Assembly (NCBI RefSeq): GCF_035594765.1
Contig: NC_085842.1
Span: forward strand, 1,302,001-1,366,000
Direction of reading: 5' to 3'
Source: Anolis carolinensis
Taxonomy: Eukaryota
DNA: 64,000 nucleotides
Below the pieces are notes generated by a model. It saw only the letters and a program-made list of their open reading frames with translations. It was not told where the DNA came from and did not search any database. The position numbers and the translations under genes were made by a program. This document shows positions 27,475-54,924 of this stretch, piece after piece (the stretch's first letter is position 1; the number at the start of each line of letters is the position of its first letter).

Positions 27475-27670
27475 NNNNNNNNNNNNNNNNNNNNNNNNNN
27501 NNNNNNNNNNNNNNNNNNNNNNNNNNNNNNNNNNNNNNNNNNNNNNNNNNNNNNNNNNNNNNNNNNNNNNNNNNNNNNNNNNNNNNNNNNNNNNNNNNNN
27601 NNNNNNNNNNNNNNNNNNNNNNNNNNNNNNNNNNNNNNNNNNNNNNNNNNNNNNNNNNNNNNNNNNNNNN
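27475..27670. other. Assembly gap (196 N)
   Basis: Run of n. Confidence 1.
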
Positions 27671-47957: not shown

Positions 47958-49250
47958 CTATTGGAAATACTGCATCTCTGGGTGGGTCCTTTGATGGGAA
48001 CGTAGACGGTCACTGAGACTGAAGCTTTTTCCACATTCTATGCATTTATGTGGCTTCTCCCCTGTGTGGGTCCTTTGATGGGAATGTAGATTGCCACTAC
48101 GACTGAAGCTTTGTCCACATTCCATGCATTTATATGGCTTCTCCCCTGTGTGGGTCCTTTGATGGGAACGTAAATGTCCACTCTGAAGGAAGGTTTTTCC
48201 ACATTCCATGCATTTATGTGGCTTCTCCCCTGTGTGGATCTTTTGATGGATACGCAGAGTGCCACTACAACTGAAGCTTTTTCCACATTCTAAGCATTTA
48301 TGTGGCTTCTCCCCTGTGTGGATCTTTTGATGAATATGCAGTGTGCCACTACGACTGAAGCTTTGTCCACATTCTAAGCATTTATGTGGCTTCTCCCCTG
48401 TGTGGGTCCTTTGATGGATACGCAGAGTGCCACTACGACTGAAGCTTTGTCCACATTCCATGCATTTATGTGGCTTCTCGCCTGTGTGGGTCCTTTGATG
48501 GGAACGTAAATGTCCACTCTGAAGGAACTTTTTTCCACATTCTAGGCATTTATGTGGCTTCTCCCCTGTGTGCTTCCTTTGATGGGAACGCAGATTCCAA
48601 CTCTGGCTGAAGCTTTGTCCACATTCCATGCATTTGTATGGCTTCTCCCCTGTGTGCGTCCTTTGATGAATACGCAGAGTGCCACTACGACTGAAGCTTT
48701 GACCACATTCCATGCATTTATGTGGCTTCTCCCCTGTGTGGATCTTTTGATGGATACGCAGTGTGCCACTACGACTGAAGCTTTTTCCACATTCTAAGCA
48801 TTTATGTGGCTTCTCCCCTGTGTGCGTCCTTTGATGGGAACGTAGATTGTCACTCCGACTGAAGCTTTCTCCACATTCCATGCATTTGTATGGCTTCTCC
48901 CCTGTGTGGGTCCTTTGATGGGAACGCAGATGTGCACTCTGACTGAAGCTTTTCCCACATTCCATGCATTGATACGCCTTCTCCCCTGTGTGGGTCCGTT
49001 CATGTACAGTAAGATAACTTTTTCTATCAAATTGTTTCCCACATTCCATACACTGATGTAACTTCTCTGTGTGTGATCTGGGATAGGGAGGTAGAGGACT
49101 TGCCATCCTTTTACAATGATAATTCAAATACCATGCCAGGGGTTCACAGATATAACCTTCTGAACAGCAAAGTTTTTGTACTGCTGTAGCCTTCTGCTCG
49201 CTTTCAAAAGCCTCTTTCTTCCACACAATCTTATTCCCCCCCCCCTCCAT
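47958..49250 (-). CDS. C2H2 zinc-finger gene 4 (13 fingers)
   Basis: 430-aa ORF; ATGs at 49250 and 49106 (the latter shared with paralogues); acceptor before exon start 49404. Confidence 0.88.
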
Positions 49251-49931
49251 AATTGCACTAGTACGCAGCTTGAAATATATTATTCTACCACTTATTTCTT
49301 CTTGTTGTCATTGCTGTGTATCTTGAAGTCACTTCATAGACTTCCAGCACTCTTCAGGCAAACCTCTCACAAGGTATTCTTCACAGAACTTGTTCAGAAG
49401 TTGCCTGCCAGAGAAATGAGAGGAAAATCTCTCCAGGAGTTGAACAGAGAAAAATCTCATGGAACATATTAATAATAATAACAACAACTGTCAGGCTTAC
49501 TTCAAAGGACCAGTCTGAACGCAGATCAAAGACAGCTGCTCTCAAACACAATCTTTATTGAAGAATACATGACTTTGGAAAAGTCGAGAATGACCTAATG
49601 TTTACATACATCTGATTTTATCACTTCTGATGCAACGTAATATCACACGCAAATATCATCATCAAACCCCACCTTCTGGATCACATTTCCACCAAGGTTT
49701 CTATCCCCCCCACACTACAGCAATTATAATTGTTTATACTTTCACCCCTGAGTTCCCAGGCTCATTTTATCTTCTCCCGCCAGGTGCTCGCATGTTTATG
49801 TTATGAAGTCAGATTCAGGGCTTGGAAATTCAGCCCTGGGATCTGGCTGCATGACATGGCGCCCCCGTTTTCTTCGTCCTCCTCTTCGGTTCTTCTTTCA
49901 CCATAGCCCTGAAACAAATCAAACAATAACT

Positions 49932-51446
49932 CTATGGGTCCATTTTGTCTAAAGTCCCCATATATTTTTTCAGCAAGCTGCGATGGAAGACTGGGTGTAT
50001 TTTCCCTAAACTTTTTGGCAATGCCAATTGGAAAGTCACTTCATTGATAACACCCTGTATTCTGAATGGTCCAATATATTTGGGGCCCAGTTTTCTTGAA
50101 GGTAACCCCAATTTGATGTTTTGGGTACTTAACCACACTAGATCTCCTTTATCTAATTTATCGCCTTCCACCCTCTTTCTGTCTGCGAACGTTTTATACT
50201 TTTTGTGTGCTTCTTTTAACGATGCAGTCACTTGATTCCAACATTCCATCATTTGCGTTTTCCATTTCCCTGCCTCTGTTCCTTCATTTTCTGTCCACCT
50301 CGGCAATTGGGGTAAAGGTTGTATTTCATACCCGTAAACTACTTCAAAGGGGGTTTTATTTGTTGCTGAATGTATAGTTGAATTAAAGGCTAGTTCCGCA
50401 AATGCCAACCACCTAGACCAGTCATTTTGTCTCATGTTAGAGTATATTCGAAGGAACTGCCCAAGCGTTTGCTGAGTACGTTCTACCGCCCCGTTTGTCA
50501 TGGGGTGAAAAGCAGAACTTAAACTCCTTTCTGCTCCTAGCATTTCCAAGAATTTTTCCCAAAATTTTGCTGTGAATTGTACTCCTCTGTCACTGACTAC
50601 TCTACTTGGACATCCATGTAATTTGTAAATATGGTTTATGTACAATTCAGCTAGTTTCTCAGCCGATGGTAGCTTCGTCAGTGCTATAAAGTGGGCCTGT
50701 TTAGAAAACAGGTCTAATACTGTCCAAATATAACGATGTCCTTTGCTGACTGGCAGTTCTCCCACAAAGTCCATAGCTACACATTCCCAAGGCCTGGTAG
50801 GTTCCGCTACTGTCTGTAACAATCCCATAGGCTTCCCTCCTCCCGATTTATTTCTGGCACAATCATCACATTGGACAACATGATTCTTTATGTCCTTCCT
50901 CATTCCTGGCCACCAACAATGTTTTGCTATTGCCTTTGTTGTTTTGGTAATTCCTGTATGACCAGCGCTCTGGTTGTTGTGAAAACGATGCAGAATCTTA
51001 ATCCTTAATATCGCTGGGATATACAGTTTCTTGTTTACAAACCAAAATCCCCCCTTCTGGTCCCCCTTTTCTGCGTTGGACGCGATCCATTGATCTCCTT
51101 TATAAGACTGTTTTAGTTCATTCCCCCAGTTATCTTCCCCGCCGAGTTCGACAAAAGCCGTGTCCTCCTTTTGGGTTTGTGCTCTTGTCCTGACAGCTAA
51201 GCCCCATTGTTTGTCAGAGAATATTGTCCCCTCCTTTGCTGTGGTTAGGCCTTCGTGTTGAGGCATGCGTGAAAGAGCATCTGCCAAGACATTCTGTTTC
51301 CCTTGAAAAAACTTTAATTGGAAATCGAATCTGCTGAAGTATTGCGCCCATCTGATTTGTTTGGGGGACAATTTTCTAGGAGACTTTAAATACTGGAGAT
51401 TCTTATGGTCAGACCAAATTTCGAATGGGATTCCGCTTCCTTCGAG
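49932..51446 (-). CDS. Gypsy RNase H C-terminus plus integrase
   Basis: SDHKNL, HHCC, AMDF...VSDRGVQF...GAVER (DDE), GPF motif; no chromodomain seen before the stop. Confidence 0.9.
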   Translation of the reverse strand, partial: LEGSGIPFEIWSDHKNLQYLKSPRKLSPKQIRWAQYFSRFDFQLKFFQGKQNVLADALSRMPQHEGLTTAKEGTIFSDKQWGLAVRTRAQTQKEDTAFVELGGEDNWGNELKQSYKGDQWIASNAEKGDQKGGFWFVNKKLYIPAILRIKILHRFHNNQSAGHTGITKTTKAIAKHCWWPGMRKDIKNHVVQCDDCARNKSGGGKPMGLLQTVAEPTRPWECVAMDFVGELPVSKGHRYIWTVLDLFSKQAHFIALTKLPSAEKLAELYINHIYKLHGCPSRVVSDRGVQFTAKFWEKFLEMLGAERSLSSAFHPMTNGAVERTQQTLGQFLRIYSNMRQNDWSRWLAFAELAFNSTIHSATNKTPFEVVYGYEIQPLPQLPRWTENEGTEAGKWKTQMMECWNQVTASLKEAHKKYKTFADRKRVEGDKLDKGDLVWLSTQNIKLGLPSRKLGPKYIGPFRIQGVINEVTFQLALPKSLGKIHPVFHRSLLKKYMGTLDKMDP

Positions 51447-53017
51447 GGCTTTGGGGCTTTTGGCGGCTCCCCCTTCCGGGCCCAGCATTCCGCTGCTCGG
51501 TGGCCCGTCTTCCCACATACAAAGCATCCTGGTTTAGGTTTGTTGTCGTCTCCTCTGGAGGGAATCCCCGGCCTCCCTCCGGGTCTTTCTTGCTTCCTCG
51601 TTTCTCCTCGACCTCTCGCCACCGGTCTTTGCTGGCCGCTGCTGCTCCTGAAGCGCTTTACTTGGGCCAGGGTGGATTCGACGCGCCCCGCTAGTTGAAT
51701 CCATCCCTGGAGCGTCTCGGGGTCGTCTCTGTGCGCGGCCCAGCTGAAAATCTCGGGGCGTAGTCCCTCTTTAAATAGTTCCACTTTGGTTACTTCAGAC
51801 CACTCCGGTACCCTTTCCGCGAGGTGGAGGAATTCCTCTGCGTACTCGGGCACCGTTTTGTCCCTTTGTTTTATTCCTTTCAGCTGGTCTCGAGCCCTCA
51901 ATTGCTCTAGCCGGTCTCTGAACCGGTTCTCCAGTGCGGCGAGGAAGCGGGGCACTGACCTCAGGCATGGGTCGCGTCTGGCATGCAATTGCACATACCA
52001 GCTGGCCGCTCCTCGCTTTAGTGTGTTGCCGATGGCTCGAACCCTGCTTGCTTCGGAGGGAAATGTGTGTGCGTTGTCTTCCATGTATCCTCTAATGCTA
52101 ATTAGAAAAAAGTTCAGTTCATCTGATTCCCCTCCGTATTCCAGCTTGAGATCTTCCCTTCTAGGCATCCATTCCGCAGCCCTTTGATGTTGTCTGGGCG
52201 GCATGGGGAAGGGTTGCATCAGGTTTCCTCGGGCGGCTCCTTGGAACACGCCGCGCCCCACTCCGGTGGTCATTCTGCGCGGCTCCTGGAAGTCTGCCGC
52301 CGCTGTCGGCTCTTCCGCCCATCCGCATACTGGCCTAGCTGTAGCCCCCTCATCTCGCCTTTCCTCGTCGTACGGCACATCCTCCTCCTCTTCCTGGACC
52401 CCCCGCTCCTCTCCGCCTTCGTCTGCGAATCCACTGGACCCGATCCCTGGCCCCAGTGGCCTTTCCACCCCGACGCCCATTCTGGGGGTTGGGAGCTCTG
52501 TTGGAGACGGCGGCCTCAGGGTCCCCAGGGCTCGCTGACGCTCCACTTCTCGCGCCATTCTGTCCCGGAACTGCAGCTCCTGCCAGTATTCCTCATCTCC
52601 CTCGTCCCTTGCCGCCACGGGGCTCTGCGTTGACGCCCGCTGGCCCCTCTGGCTCCAATCTCCTTCTTTGCTTGGTTCTCTCTCGGCGCCATATCGGCTG
52701 GCCTCCTTCTGGAGATTCTCTTCCAATAATGGCACCAATCTCTCCACGGTTTCCGATAGCCTGGATAAATTAGTTTCCAGGATGGATAACCGCAGGGCCA
52801 CGGTCTCCGGCATACTTCCTCCAGATCCCCAACTGGTTTCTGCAGCCGCAGAGACGCCTCTTCCGAGCCTGGGAATTCTCTGGGTCACGCCGTTCGGCTT
52901 GGGGTACCCCGTAGAGGAAGCTATGGCTTGCAGCGTCTCTTCTCTCTTCGGCCGGGCCCCTTGCAAAGGCCTCTCTGCCTCATTTGGGCTTTGATCTTCT
53001 TCCTCGCTCATTATCAC
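51386..53017 (-). CDS. gag: Gypsy Gag (sushi/PEG10-like capsid plus CCHC)
   Basis: LKRGAASWY...QRDKTVPEYAEEF...FKEGL; CFVCGKTGHRAAEC. Confidence 0.9.
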   Translation of the reverse strand: MIMSEEEDQSPNEAERPLQGARPKREETLQAIASSTGYPKPNGVTQRIPRLGRGVSAAAETSWGSGGSMPETVALRLSILETNLSRLSETVERLVPLLEENLQKEASRYGAEREPSKEGDWSQRGQRASTQSPVAARDEGDEEYWQELQFRDRMAREVERQRALGTLRPPSPTELPTPRMGVGVERPLGPGIGSSGFADEGGEERGVQEEEEDVPYDEERRDEGATARPVCGWAEEPTAAADFQEPRRMTTGVGRGVFQGAARGNLMQPFPMPPRQHQRAAEWMPRREDLKLEYGGESDELNFFLISIRGYMEDNAHTFPSEASRVRAIGNTLKRGAASWYVQLHARRDPCLRSVPRFLAALENRFRDRLEQLRARDQLKGIKQRDKTVPEYAEEFLHLAERVPEWSEVTKVELFKEGLRPEIFSWAAHRDDPETLQGWIQLAGRVESTLAQVKRFRSSSGQQRPVARGRGETRKQERPGGRPGIPSRGDDNKPKPGCFVCGKTGHRAAECWARKGEPPKAPKPSKEAESHSKFGLTIRISSI

Positions 53018-54924
53018 TTCACTGCGAATTCCGCAGGAGGGTGAGAAATGGGATTCTCGACTTTAATGTCAGGCTTACTTCAAAGGACCAGTCTGAACGC
53101 AGATCAAAGACAGCTGCTCTCAAACACAATCTTTATTGAAGAATACATGACTTTGGAAAAGTCGAGAATGACCTAATGTTTACATACATCTGATTTTATC
53201 ACTTCTGATGCAACGTAATATCACACGCAAATATCATCATCAAACCCCACCTTCTGGATCACATTTCCACCAAGGTTTCTATCCCCCCCACACTACAGCA
53301 ATTATAATTGTTTATACTTTCACCCCTGAGTTCCCAGGCTCATTTTATCTTCTCCCGCCAGGTGCTCGCATGTTTATGTTATGAAGTCAGATTCAGGGCT
53401 TGGAAATTCAGCCCTGGGATCTGGCTGCATGTTCATGTCATGCAGCCAGATCCCAGGGCTGAATTTCCAAGCCCTGAATCTGACTTCATAACATAAACAT
53501 GCGAGCACCTGGCGGGAGAAGATAAAATGAGCCTGGGAACTCAGGGGTGAAAGTATAAACAATTATAATTGCTGTAGTGTGGGGGGGGATAGAAACCTTG
53601 GTGGAAATGTGATCCAGAAGGTGGGGTTTGATGATGATATTTGCGTGTGATATTACGTTGCATCAGAAGTGATAAAATCAGATGTATGTAAACATTAGGT
53701 CATTCTCGACTTTAATGTCAGGCTTACTTCAAAGGACCAGTCTGAACGCAGATCAAAGACAGCTGCTCTCAAACACAATCTTTATTGAAGAATACATGAC
53801 TTTGGAAAAGTCGAGAATGACCTAATGTTTACATACATCTGATTTTATCACTTCTGATGCAACGTAATATCACACGCAAATATCATCATCAAACCCCACC
53901 TTCTGGATCACATTTCCACCAAGGTTTCTATCCCCCCCACACTACAGCAATTATAATTGTTTATACTTTCACCCCTGAGTTCCCAGGCTCATTTTATCTT
54001 CTCCCGCCAGGTGCTCGCATGTTTATGTTATGAAGTCAGATTCAGGGCTTGGAAATTCAGCCCTGGGATCTGGCTGCATGACAAACAACTTTATTCTTGT
54101 ACAGTAGAGACTCGCTTATCCAACATTCTGGATTATCCAACACAGGCTCCCTTTTAGTAGTCAATGTTTTCAAAACATCGTGATATTTTGGTGCTAAATT
54201 TGTAAATACAGTAATTACTACATAGCATTACTGCGTATTGAACTACTTTTTCTGTCAAATTTGTTGTATAACATGATATTTTGGTGCTTAATTTGTAATG
54301 ATGTTTAATAGGCTTTTCCTTAATCCCTCCTTATTATCCAACATATTCACTTATCCAATGTTCTGCCGGCCCTTTTATGTTGGATACGTGAGACTCTACT
54401 GTATTACTAATCTAATAATGCAGCACAGAAGAGATAAAGGGGCAGCAGAGGAATATGTGGCTATTCCAAAAAGGTCCAAGTCTCATAAAGAAGAGATTGG
54501 ACCAGAATGAGGAAGCATAAGGATTAAGGTAGCAGAAATAACATCAAGAGATAACACAGGAATACCTGGCTATGCCAAAGGGATCCCAGTGTGTTCAGGC
54601 CAGGTAATGTATATATTTTTCAAGATGAACAGAAGAGCAGAGAAGCACAGAAGAGATGGAGTTTTTTTTGAGATTATTGGGGATCAACTCGAGTTGGGTG
54701 TGAGGTTTGCTGTGAGTCTGACCCAGAAGCAAGAAGGTGTTGTTGAGGGCGGATCTAAAAAGGAGTGACTGGAGTAAAAAATAAGGAACTGAGAGGAACA
54801 GTGAACCAGAGTGTCTCCATTTTGTCTATTGCTGTCAGCTTGAACATTAGAGTGTCTGTTTTAACTAATATTAAAAGTCTGATATTAAAAGTTGCACCCT
54901 GCCTCTCCAGAGGAAAGGCAAGTG

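What the first reader, a model, noticed from the sequence alone, without database searches (positions are those of the whole stretch)
53053..54083. LTR / inverted-U3 / LTR triplet: a possible integrated snap-back product of self-primed reverse transcription
Seen: in element sense (minus) the order is full LTR (54083-53716), TT plus AAAGTCGAGAAT, antisense copy of the LTR's 5' part (to 53436), a 4-nt joint, an LTR missing its first 3 nt, the same PBS, gag. The strand switch sits exactly on the 12-mer (53702-53713) shared by the PBS and its complement inside the LTR. The inverted copy also extends by the 2 nt (CA) that precede the 3' LTR, like an unprocessed cDNA end; this is weak, since 2 nt can match by chance. 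Known: plus-strand strong-stop DNA ends in a PBS copy. Inference: in a self-priming element that end can fold back on R and copy U3, and the hairpin was then joined to a second cDNA and integrated. I do not recall this structure being described in a vertebrate genome.
Basis: partly seen in the sequence, partly recalled or inferred. Interest (0 to 1): 0.85.

Follow-up and report, generated by a model that had tools for sequence, protein, structure and literature searches.

The report
Fold-back LTR copy in anole retrotransposon
A very young, internally deleted Ty3/gypsy retrotransposon in the green anole genome has an extra 5' LTR and an upside-down copy of the LTR's promoter half, joined at the ends expected of reverse-transcription intermediates. 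It looks like a fossil of a reverse-transcription accident specific to self-priming elements, though no sequencing reads could be used to confirm it.

Summary
On the minus strand the order is: LTR1 (368 bp), TT, 12-nt PBS, a 280-nt antisense copy of [CA+U3+first 12 nt of R], AA, LTR2 lacking its first 3 nt, TT, PBS, gag, a pol remnant and a 3' LTR. All LTRs are identical. A 6-bp target duplication (GTTGTT), the length seen in five of six checked close relatives, flanks the outermost LTRs.

The host is Anolis carolinensis. The family is an apparently active Tf1/sushi-like self-priming Ty3/gypsy element. PBS pairing with the start of R is kept by compensatory changes in four lineages.

The best reading is a plus-strand strong-stop DNA whose retained PBS 3' end primed on the plus-sense start of R. 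It copied U3 to the unprocessed cDNA end (+TG), then switched end-to-end onto the minus-strand 3' end. The composite was completed and integrated by integrase.

Weaknesses: this is a single case, ten other copies are normal, and the read-level check failed. The public runs were short contigs of a very high-copy family. I found no description of this structure in the searched literature. Rivals are a post-integration inverted triplication and an assembly artefact.

The parts
54084..54089 (-). Upstream copy of the 6-bp target-site duplication GTTGTT
   Evidence: It matches 49483-49488. Six-bp TSDs were found in L001-L003, L007 and L009.
53716..54083 (-). LTR1, complete (368 bp, TGTCA...TGACA): U3 1-265, R from 266, AATAAA at 298
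   Evidence: It is 100% identical to the 3' LTR.
53807..53818 (-). Self-primer ATTCTCGACTTT (predicted start of R) inside LTR1, with a TATA-like ATAAAAT 30 nt upstream
   Evidence: Covariation with the PBS is shown.
53702..53715 (-). TT plus the 12-nt PBS AAAGTCGAGAAT, which is also the first 12 nt of the inverted copy (the strand-switch site)
53434..53713 (+). Inverted copy of CA+U3+R1-12 (280 nt), lying sense on the + strand and therefore antisense in the element. It has one extra G in the G7 run near 53582-53589.
   Evidence: Alignment; pairs I2 and I4; 99.6% identity. It shares LTR variant 243C with this element's own LTRs.
53432..53435 (-). Joint TGAA: TG is the complement of the CA that precedes the 3' LTR, and AA is unexplained filler
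   Evidence: CA precedes the 3' LTR in the nine A. carolinensis copies of this and the closely related subfamilies (L001-L004 and L007-L010).
53067..53431 (-). LTR2, lacking the first 3 nt (TGT)
   Evidence: 365/365 identical to LTR1 positions 4-368.
53053..53066 (-). TT plus the PBS of the functional 5' end
51386..53017 (-). gag ORF (Retrotrans_gag, Ty3_capsid, zf-CCHC)
   Evidence: It is 97-100% identical to Anolis carolinensis LOC proteins.
49932..51527 (-). pol remnant (RNase H tail, integrase H2C2, rve, SH3_Tf2-1). Relative to L001, 1739 bp covering PR and RT are missing, with the junction at 51446/51447.
49857..49880 (-). Polypurine-tract region, ending ...GGGGGCGCCA immediately before the 3' LTR
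49489..49856 (-). 3' LTR
49483..49488 (-). Downstream copy of the TSD GTTGTT

Best explanation
This is an integrated product of aberrant plus-strand synthesis in a self-priming (Tf1/sushi-like) Ty3/gypsy retrotransposon of Anolis carolinensis. In these elements the PBS is complementary to the first 11-12 nt of R. A plus-strand strong-stop DNA (U3-R-U5-TT-PBS-3') therefore has a 3' end that can pair with the minus-strand PBS complement (the normal second jump). It can also pair with the start of R on any plus-sense strand.

Inferred step 1: a displaced strong-stop DNA paired its PBS end with R1-12, either on itself (snap-back with a 93-nt loop) or on another plus strand. It was then extended through U3 to the template's 5' end, which includes the 2 nt (CA) that integrase normally trims, giving ...GACA-TG.

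Inferred step 2: after 2 untemplated A's, synthesis switched end-to-end onto the 3' end of a completed minus strand, entering 3 nt in. It continued as a normal plus strand (LTR2-PBS-gag...3' LTR). The mirror-image event, in which the minus-strand 3' end jumps onto the fold-back strand, gives the same product.

Inferred step 3: the minus strand copied the fold-back strand back to LTR1's U3 end, giving a full duplex with two proper LTR termini.

Shown: the outermost LTR termini carry a 6-bp target duplication, so integrase inserted the composite, or the element it derives from. The locus has no evident function. It is a mutational fossil, and it leaves a palindrome of about 275 bp covering U3.
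For: Anatomy: searches show the exact structure, with the switch on the only 12-nt inverted repeat and the other end of the inverted copy at the U3 terminus plus 2 nt. Those 2 nt (TG) sit directly after GACA and match the PPT side (CA). They do not match the host flank of LTR1, where TT would give AA.

Self-priming premise: the pairing of the RNA 5' end with the PBS is kept in four lineages (gag identity down to 53%). Five of 11 pairs changed on both sides and none is broken. TATA-like or TATA boxes lie about 30 nt upstream of the self-primer.

Folding: the 382-nt strong-stop DNA pairs its 3' PBS with R1-12 in both the MFE and the centroid structures.

Integration: GTTGTT flanks the outer LTRs, and 6-bp TSDs occur in five normal copies.

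Same-lineage template: the inverted copy carries this element's LTR variant 243C, whereas L001-L003 have T.

Youth and activity: all three LTRs are identical. Full-length relatives have identical LTR pairs and one intact 1608-aa gag-pol ORF.

Literature: for Tf1, about 50% of cDNA keeps the PBS as a single-stranded 3' tail, about 20% keeps PPT nucleotides at the other end, and RT adds non-templated nucleotides to most 3' ends (PMC11042837, citing Atwood-Moore 2005 and 2006).
Against: This is a single instance. Ten other copies (L001-L010) are normal, so recurrence at the same 12-mer is untested. Read-level confirmation was not achieved: the four runs laid were short contigs of a very high-copy family, and no contig was listed across either junction. 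The left junction is not diagnostic, because any template switch, in vivo or in vitro, would use the 12-nt inverted repeat. The TG match has a 1/16 chance, and the joint can also be read as a perfect head-to-head junction in which T is replaced by AA. The model needs two strong-stop DNAs and an end-to-end jump, and neither has been shown for this family. The TSD does not tell integration of the composite apart from rearrangement after a normal integration.
Confidence: 0.6

Rival explanations
1. Post-integration replication or repair error. A normal element integrated, giving the TSD. Later a nascent DNA strand switched templates at the 12-nt inverted repeat (quasi-palindrome, FoSTeS/MMBIR or ODIRA-type switching) and switched back. 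The result is a forward-inverted-forward triplication of U3.
For: The architecture is formally an interstitial inverted triplication whose first junction lies in a short inverted repeat, as in ODIRA and DUP-TRP/INV-DUP models (PMC4689423, PMC10766183, PMC11293582; found). The TSD is equally compatible with this order of events. The 12-mer is the only long inverted microhomology available.
Against: The second junction lies at the U3 terminus plus 2 nt. A chromosomal template would carry the inverted copy on into host flank: from LTR1 the next bases would be AACAAC, but TG is observed. Only the 3' LTR, 3.5-4 kb away, has the matching CA. The switch back would then have to fall within 2 nt of the LTR boundary by coincidence, roughly a 1-2% chance over a few hundred possible positions. 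Untemplated filler and a 3-nt loss at an LTR end fit cDNA ends better.
Confidence: 0.15
2. Assembly, cloning or sequencing artefact. A chimeric or fold-back read from a very high-copy family was built into the assembly, and the real locus has one 5' LTR.
For: The family is extremely abundant: summed contig word depths reach the thousands to over a million, and contigs are only about 80-130 nt. That invites misassembly. The three LTRs are identical, the palindrome is a hard sequencing template, and the only difference in the inverted copy is a homopolymer length (G8 versus G7), a typical sequencing error. No independent read support was obtained. Exact look-ups of ORFs spanning the junctions found nothing.
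Against: Missed-adapter palindromes and random chimeras break at arbitrary positions. Here all three junction features coincide with reverse-transcription landmarks: the PBS 3' end, the unprocessed U3 end, and a U3 end with filler. The structure is not a simple mirror image of adjacent sequence. The inverted copy carries this copy's own LTR variant 243C. Flanks and TSD are coherent.
Confidence: 0.12
3. A completed snap-back hairpin was ligated by host end-joining to the U3 end of a second, full-length cDNA, and the product integrated.
For: The joint (2-nt overhang copy, 2-nt filler, 3-nt loss) looks like an end-joining junction between two U3 termini.
Against: Ligation to the open end of a hairpin leaves a closed loop (R-U5) at the far end. 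LTR1's U3 terminus would then be buried in the stem next to the joint. In the genome that terminus lies 650 bp from the joint and is joined to host DNA with the family's 6-bp TSD. The hairpin must therefore have been copied into an open duplex.
Confidence: 0.06

Closest known systems
Tf1 (Schizosaccharomyces pombe) self-primed reverse transcription and its cDNA end structures
   Same: The PBS is complementary to the first 11-12 nt of the transcript, and full-length copies have a single gag-pol ORF. The junctions show a retained PBS copy at a plus-strand 3' end, retained PPT nucleotides at the U3 end and non-templated nucleotides, all reported for Tf1 cDNA (PMC11042837; PMC10085805 for the self-priming 'pretzel' structure).
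   Different: No fold-back (PBS to antisense U3) product, free or integrated, is described in the Tf1 papers I could read. The known aberrant Tf1 insertions are tandem, not inverted. The anole family has no chromodomain.
Self-priming of HIV-1 minus-strand strong-stop DNA at the TAR hairpin
   Same: A strong-stop DNA folds back on itself and is extended into a dead-end hairpin, competing with the proper strand transfer (PMC1919501 and PMC3185427; the rest is my own knowledge).
   Different: That involves the minus strand and the first jump, is known mainly in vitro and is suppressed by nucleocapsid. Here the plus strand and the second jump are involved, the cause is the self-priming design itself, and the product was rescued and integrated in a germline.
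Inverted triplications by replication template switching (ODIRA; DUP-TRP/INV-DUP)
   Same: The order is forward-inverted-forward, with the first junction in a short inverted repeat (PMC4689423, PMC10766183, PMC11293582).
   Different: The scale is 0.65 kb rather than kb to Mb. The second junction lies at a cDNA terminus with a PPT-side dinucleotide rather than at a second inverted repeat in chromosomal sequence.
Unprocessed retroviral LTR ends, as seen at 2-LTR circle junctions
   Same: The 2 nt beyond the conserved CA are preserved when an end escapes integrase processing (established retrovirology, my own knowledge). The TG here is in exactly that position.
   Different: Circle junctions join U5 to U3 head-to-tail. 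This joint is U3 to U3 head-to-head.

Membership tests
Ty3/gypsy (Metaviridae) LTR retrotransposon | LTRs with TG...CA termini flanking gag and pol, with a TSD | tested here: met
   The 368-bp LTRs read TGTCA...TGACA and the TSD is 6 bp.
Ty3/gypsy (Metaviridae) LTR retrotransposon | Domain order PR-RT-RH-IN with a Ty3-type capsid | tested here: met
   The full-length relative L001 shows Ty3_capsid, zf-CCHC, aspartyl protease, RVT_1, RNase H, H2C2, rve and SH3_Tf2-1 in that order. The window copy keeps gag, the RNase H tail and IN only.
Tf1/sushi self-priming group | PBS complementary to the 5' end of the element's own transcript instead of to a tRNA | tested here: met
   There is a 12-nt complement 93 nt upstream. 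It is conserved with compensatory changes in four lineages, and a TATA-like box lies about 30 nt upstream. The transcription start itself was not mapped.
Tf1/sushi self-priming group | Chromodomain at the integrase C-terminus (chromovirus) | tested here: not met
   There is no chromo hit in the window ORF or in the 1608-aa L001 polyprotein. The ORF ends just after the SH3_Tf2-1 domain.
Tf1/sushi self-priming group | RT/IN phylogenetic placement within the group | not tested
   Only indirect hints were seen: a gag relative is named PEG10-like in A. sagrei, and the integrase SH3 domain matches the Tf2-1 type.
Snap-back / self-primed strong-stop DNA product | Strand switch at the 3' end of the strong-stop DNA, with the inverted copy ending at that DNA's own 5' end | tested here: met
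   The switch is on the PBS 12-mer and the end is at the U3 terminus plus the PPT-side CA. This is compatible with priming in cis or in trans.
Snap-back / self-primed strong-stop DNA product | Direct detection of the intermediate, or recurrence at independent loci | tested here: inconclusive
   None of ten other copies has it. Reads were uninformative. A genome-wide search was not possible with these tools.
ODIRA-type inverted triplication | Both junctions at short inverted repeats in chromosomal sequence | tested here: not met
   Junction 1 qualifies (the 12-mer). Junction 2 has a 7-nt asymmetric centre at the LTR terminus, with TG that the local host flank does not template.

The most novel reading that the evidence does not exclude
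Self-priming retrotransposons have a built-in failure mode. The same PBS-to-R complementarity that starts minus-strand synthesis makes plus-strand strong-stop DNA prime on U3. Such products can be rescued, integrated and inherited in a vertebrate germline. The integrated product would then be a ready-made hairpin locus. Transcripts from LTR1 would read through about 275 bp of antisense U3 and then sense U3. That could feed small-RNA silencing aimed at the promoter of a currently active family, much as the inverted Mu killer locus does in maize.
Probability: 0.1. Interest if true: 0.8.

Novelty: new variant of a known kind. Interest (0 to 1): 0.5.

Why it matters
If real, this is a natural, heritable record of a reverse-transcription side reaction that self-priming elements should be prone to, and which I did not find described. 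It shows which cDNA ends exist in vivo in a vertebrate Tf1/sushi-like element: a retained PBS tail, an unprocessed U3 end and untemplated additions. It also gives a precise junction signature that can be searched for in any genome carrying self-priming elements, and in Tf1 cDNA. The long U3 palindrome in an active family is also a candidate fragile site and a possible source of hairpin RNA. If it is an artefact or a one-off, it is only a curiosity.

Tried and rejected
All were Logan contigs and the family is so abundant that contigs are about 80-130 nt. No contig was listed across 53701/53702 or 53432-53435. One bin (53141-53307) showed zero depth. This gives no verdict either way.
- Exact look-ups of the two ORFs that span the junctions found nothing on record. 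Such short ORFs are rarely called, so this means little.
- An exact search for the left junction in JGI metagenome contigs gave 0 hits, as expected.
- I tried to reach the same locus in an annotated assembly through the neighbouring zinc-finger ORF. It returned only generic C2H2 relatives from other species and was useless.
- I could not establish which assembly the window comes from, so independence from GCA_035594765.1 is unknown.
- The Tf1 primary papers (PMC1563812, PMC1287563, PMC6388632) are not held. Their results are cited second-hand from PMC11042837.
- Literature searches for a described LTR-PBS-antisense-U3 structure found none. The library lacks most subscription journals, so older retrovirus papers on aberrant circular DNAs could not be checked.
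- Rejected: nested integrase-mediated insertion of a second element, because the inverted segment's inner end is not an LTR terminus.
- Rejected: a missed-adapter palindrome, because the flanks are not mirrored.
- Rejected: reading AA as a copy of the host flank, because it is not adjacent to GACA.

Full report
**What is there.**
- LTR1 (54083-53716) and the 3' LTR (49856-49489) are identical over 368 bp.
- LTR2 (53431-53067) equals LTR1 positions 4-368.
- Both 5' LTRs are followed by TT and AAAGTCGAGAAT.
- The reverse complement of that 12-mer lies at LTR positions 266-277. These are its only occurrences in the window.
- From the 12-mer at 53713-53702 the sequence continues, in element sense, as the antisense of U3 down to the U3 terminus, plus TG (to 53434). 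Then come AA and LTR2 without its first three bases.
- The 280-nt inverted copy differs from CA+LTR(1-277) only by one extra G in a G7 run.
- GTTGTT is present directly outside LTR1 and directly outside the 3' LTR.
- There are no other copies of the family in the window.

**What the element is.**
- The internal region encodes a gag (Retrotrans_gag, Ty3_capsid, CCHC) and a pol remnant with the end of RNase H and a complete integrase of the Tf2-1 SH3 type.
- Gag is 97-100% identical to many 'uncharacterized LOC' proteins of Anolis carolinensis, so the genome is the green anole.
- I fetched ten other copies of this and related families through those proteins.
- Full-length relatives have two 368-bp LTRs around 4951 bp that carry one intact 1608-aa gag-PR-RT-RH-IN ORF and no chromodomain.
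- The window copy lacks 1739 bp (PR and RT) relative to them.
- LTR pairs are 100% identical in nine of the ten copies. In the tenth, L008, the ungapped comparison found the two LTRs not identical. The families are therefore very young.
- The laid contigs show the family at very high copy number.

**Self-priming.**
- In the window family, in a 91%-gag relative (L004), in a 63% relative (L005) and in an A. sagrei relative (L006), the bases after the 5' LTR are complementary to an 11-12-nt stretch inside the LTR. A TATA or TATA-like box lies about 30 nt upstream of that stretch.
- In an alignment of the four predicted RNA 5' regions, all 11 pairs of this helix are kept in all sequences. Five of them are kept through changes on both sides.
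- Self-priming is the known hallmark of the Tf1/sushi group, including vertebrate members (PMC10085805, PMC6317226). This part is not new, and it agrees with the earlier scan note s1-517424.

**How the triplet most likely arose.**
- A plus-strand strong-stop DNA of this element is U3-R-U5-TT-PBS-3'. Folded as DNA, its 3' PBS pairs with R1-12 in both the MFE and the centroid structures, leaving a recessed, extendable 3' end.
- Extension would write exactly what follows the PBS at 53701 and below: the antisense of U3.
- The copy stops at the U3 terminus plus TG. TG is the complement of the CA that precedes the 3' LTR here and in the nine other A. carolinensis copies of this and the closely related subfamilies (L001-L004, L007-L010). 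L005 and L006 end in CC and TC instead. This is the position of the two bases that integrase trims from an unprocessed end.
- The host flank of LTR1 would have given AA directly after GACA, and that is not what is seen. The template therefore ended like a cDNA plus strand, not like a chromosomal LTR.
- For Tf1 it is reported that about half of the cDNA keeps the PBS as a single-stranded 3' tail, about a fifth keeps PPT nucleotides at the other end, and RT adds untemplated nucleotides to most 3' ends (PMC11042837, citing Atwood-Moore 2005 and 2006, which I could not read directly). All three features are in these junctions.

- A hairpin ligated to a second cDNA would stay closed at its loop and would bury LTR1's U3 end beside the joint.
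- In the genome, LTR1's U3 end lies 650 bp from the joint. It is attached to host DNA with a 6-bp duplication, the length found in five normal copies.
- The fold-back strand was therefore copied into an open duplex. The simplest route is an end-to-end template switch between the fold-back strand's 3' end (...GACA-TG, plus AA) and the 3' end of a completed minus strand, entered 3 nt in. Displacement synthesis back to LTR1 follows, and then ordinary integration.
- Priming in trans on another plus strand gives the same product, so cis and trans cannot be separated.
- The joint can also be read as a perfect head-to-head U3 junction in which T is replaced by AA. That changes no step of the model.

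**Rivals.**
- Post-integration rearrangement. The order forward-inverted-forward is that of replication-based inverted triplications (PMC4689423, PMC10766183, PMC11293582), and the 12-mer would serve any template switch. The left junction is therefore not diagnostic and the TSD does not discriminate. What speaks against a chromosomal origin is the second junction: it lies at the LTR terminus, carries the PPT-side dinucleotide and does not continue into host flank.
- Artefact. Random chimeras would not be expected to break at three reverse-transcription landmarks. The inverted copy also carries this element's own LTR variant 243C, where L001-L003 have T.

**Novelty and weight.**
- None of the ten other copies has an inverted LTR piece, and the scan's notes hold no second case.
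- Four literature searches found no description of an LTR-PBS-antisense-U3-LTR structure. The library lacks much of the older retrovirus literature.
- I rate it a new variant of a known kind: an aberrant strand-transfer product of a self-priming element, fixed in a germline. Interest is moderate, and confidence is limited by the single instance and the missing read support.
- A side effect worth testing is that LTR1-driven transcripts would contain a U3 hairpin of about 275 bp.

Noticed in passing
window 51446-51447 (compare L001:9567-11305): The window copy lacks 1739 bp covering protease and reverse transcriptase, with 2 nt shared at the junction. It could only have moved with proteins supplied in trans. 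Contigs in three runs diverge exactly at this point (loose ends at 51446), as expected from the more numerous full-length copies. Whether the deletion is unique to this copy is unknown.
   Followed up: partly
L001-L004, L007, L009, L010 (A. carolinensis); L005; L006 (A. sagrei): Several related self-priming gypsy lineages have 100% identical LTR pairs, and L001 has one uninterrupted 1608-aa gag-pol ORF. The group looks currently active in anoles. The integrase has no chromodomain.
   Followed up: partly
L001:8001-9647 and L001:12845-12949: NCBI's 578-aa gag models join the gag region to a short exon that runs from the PPT region into the 3' LTR, skipping pol. This matches the earlier scan note about a pol-spanning intron giving a Gag-only mRNA.
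   Followed up: partly
window 47958-49250 (minus strand): A 430-aa ORF of tandem C2H2 zinc fingers (84-nt repeat family D1) lies about 240 bp downstream of the element on the same strand. The element may sit in an intron or upstream region of a zinc-finger gene.
   Followed up: no
window 49402-49471: In run X1 a 498-nt contig at low depth (26.8) matches the flank up to 49471 and then continues with unlike sequence, 17 nt before the 3' LTR (table 8). This could be an empty-site or microsatellite-variant allele, meaning the insertion may be polymorphic.
   Followed up: no
window 54100-54300: The host flank upstream of LTR1 is a very high-copy short repeat containing TACAGTAGAGTCTCACTTATCCAAC-like units (summed contig word depth in the millions). 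It is presumably an anole SINE.
   Followed up: no
L010:7577-7584 and L010:13259-13266: This copy has no matching target duplication (ATCTCAAA versus GTTATTCA), although its gag protein is identical to that of L009. It may be a recombinant between two insertions.
   Followed up: no
L003:4822-5972 and L003:15710-16860: Identical 1151-bp direct repeats flank the element in L003, suggesting it is nested inside another, larger LTR element.
   Followed up: no
window 27475-27670: A run of 196 N, either a gap or masked sequence.
   Followed up: no
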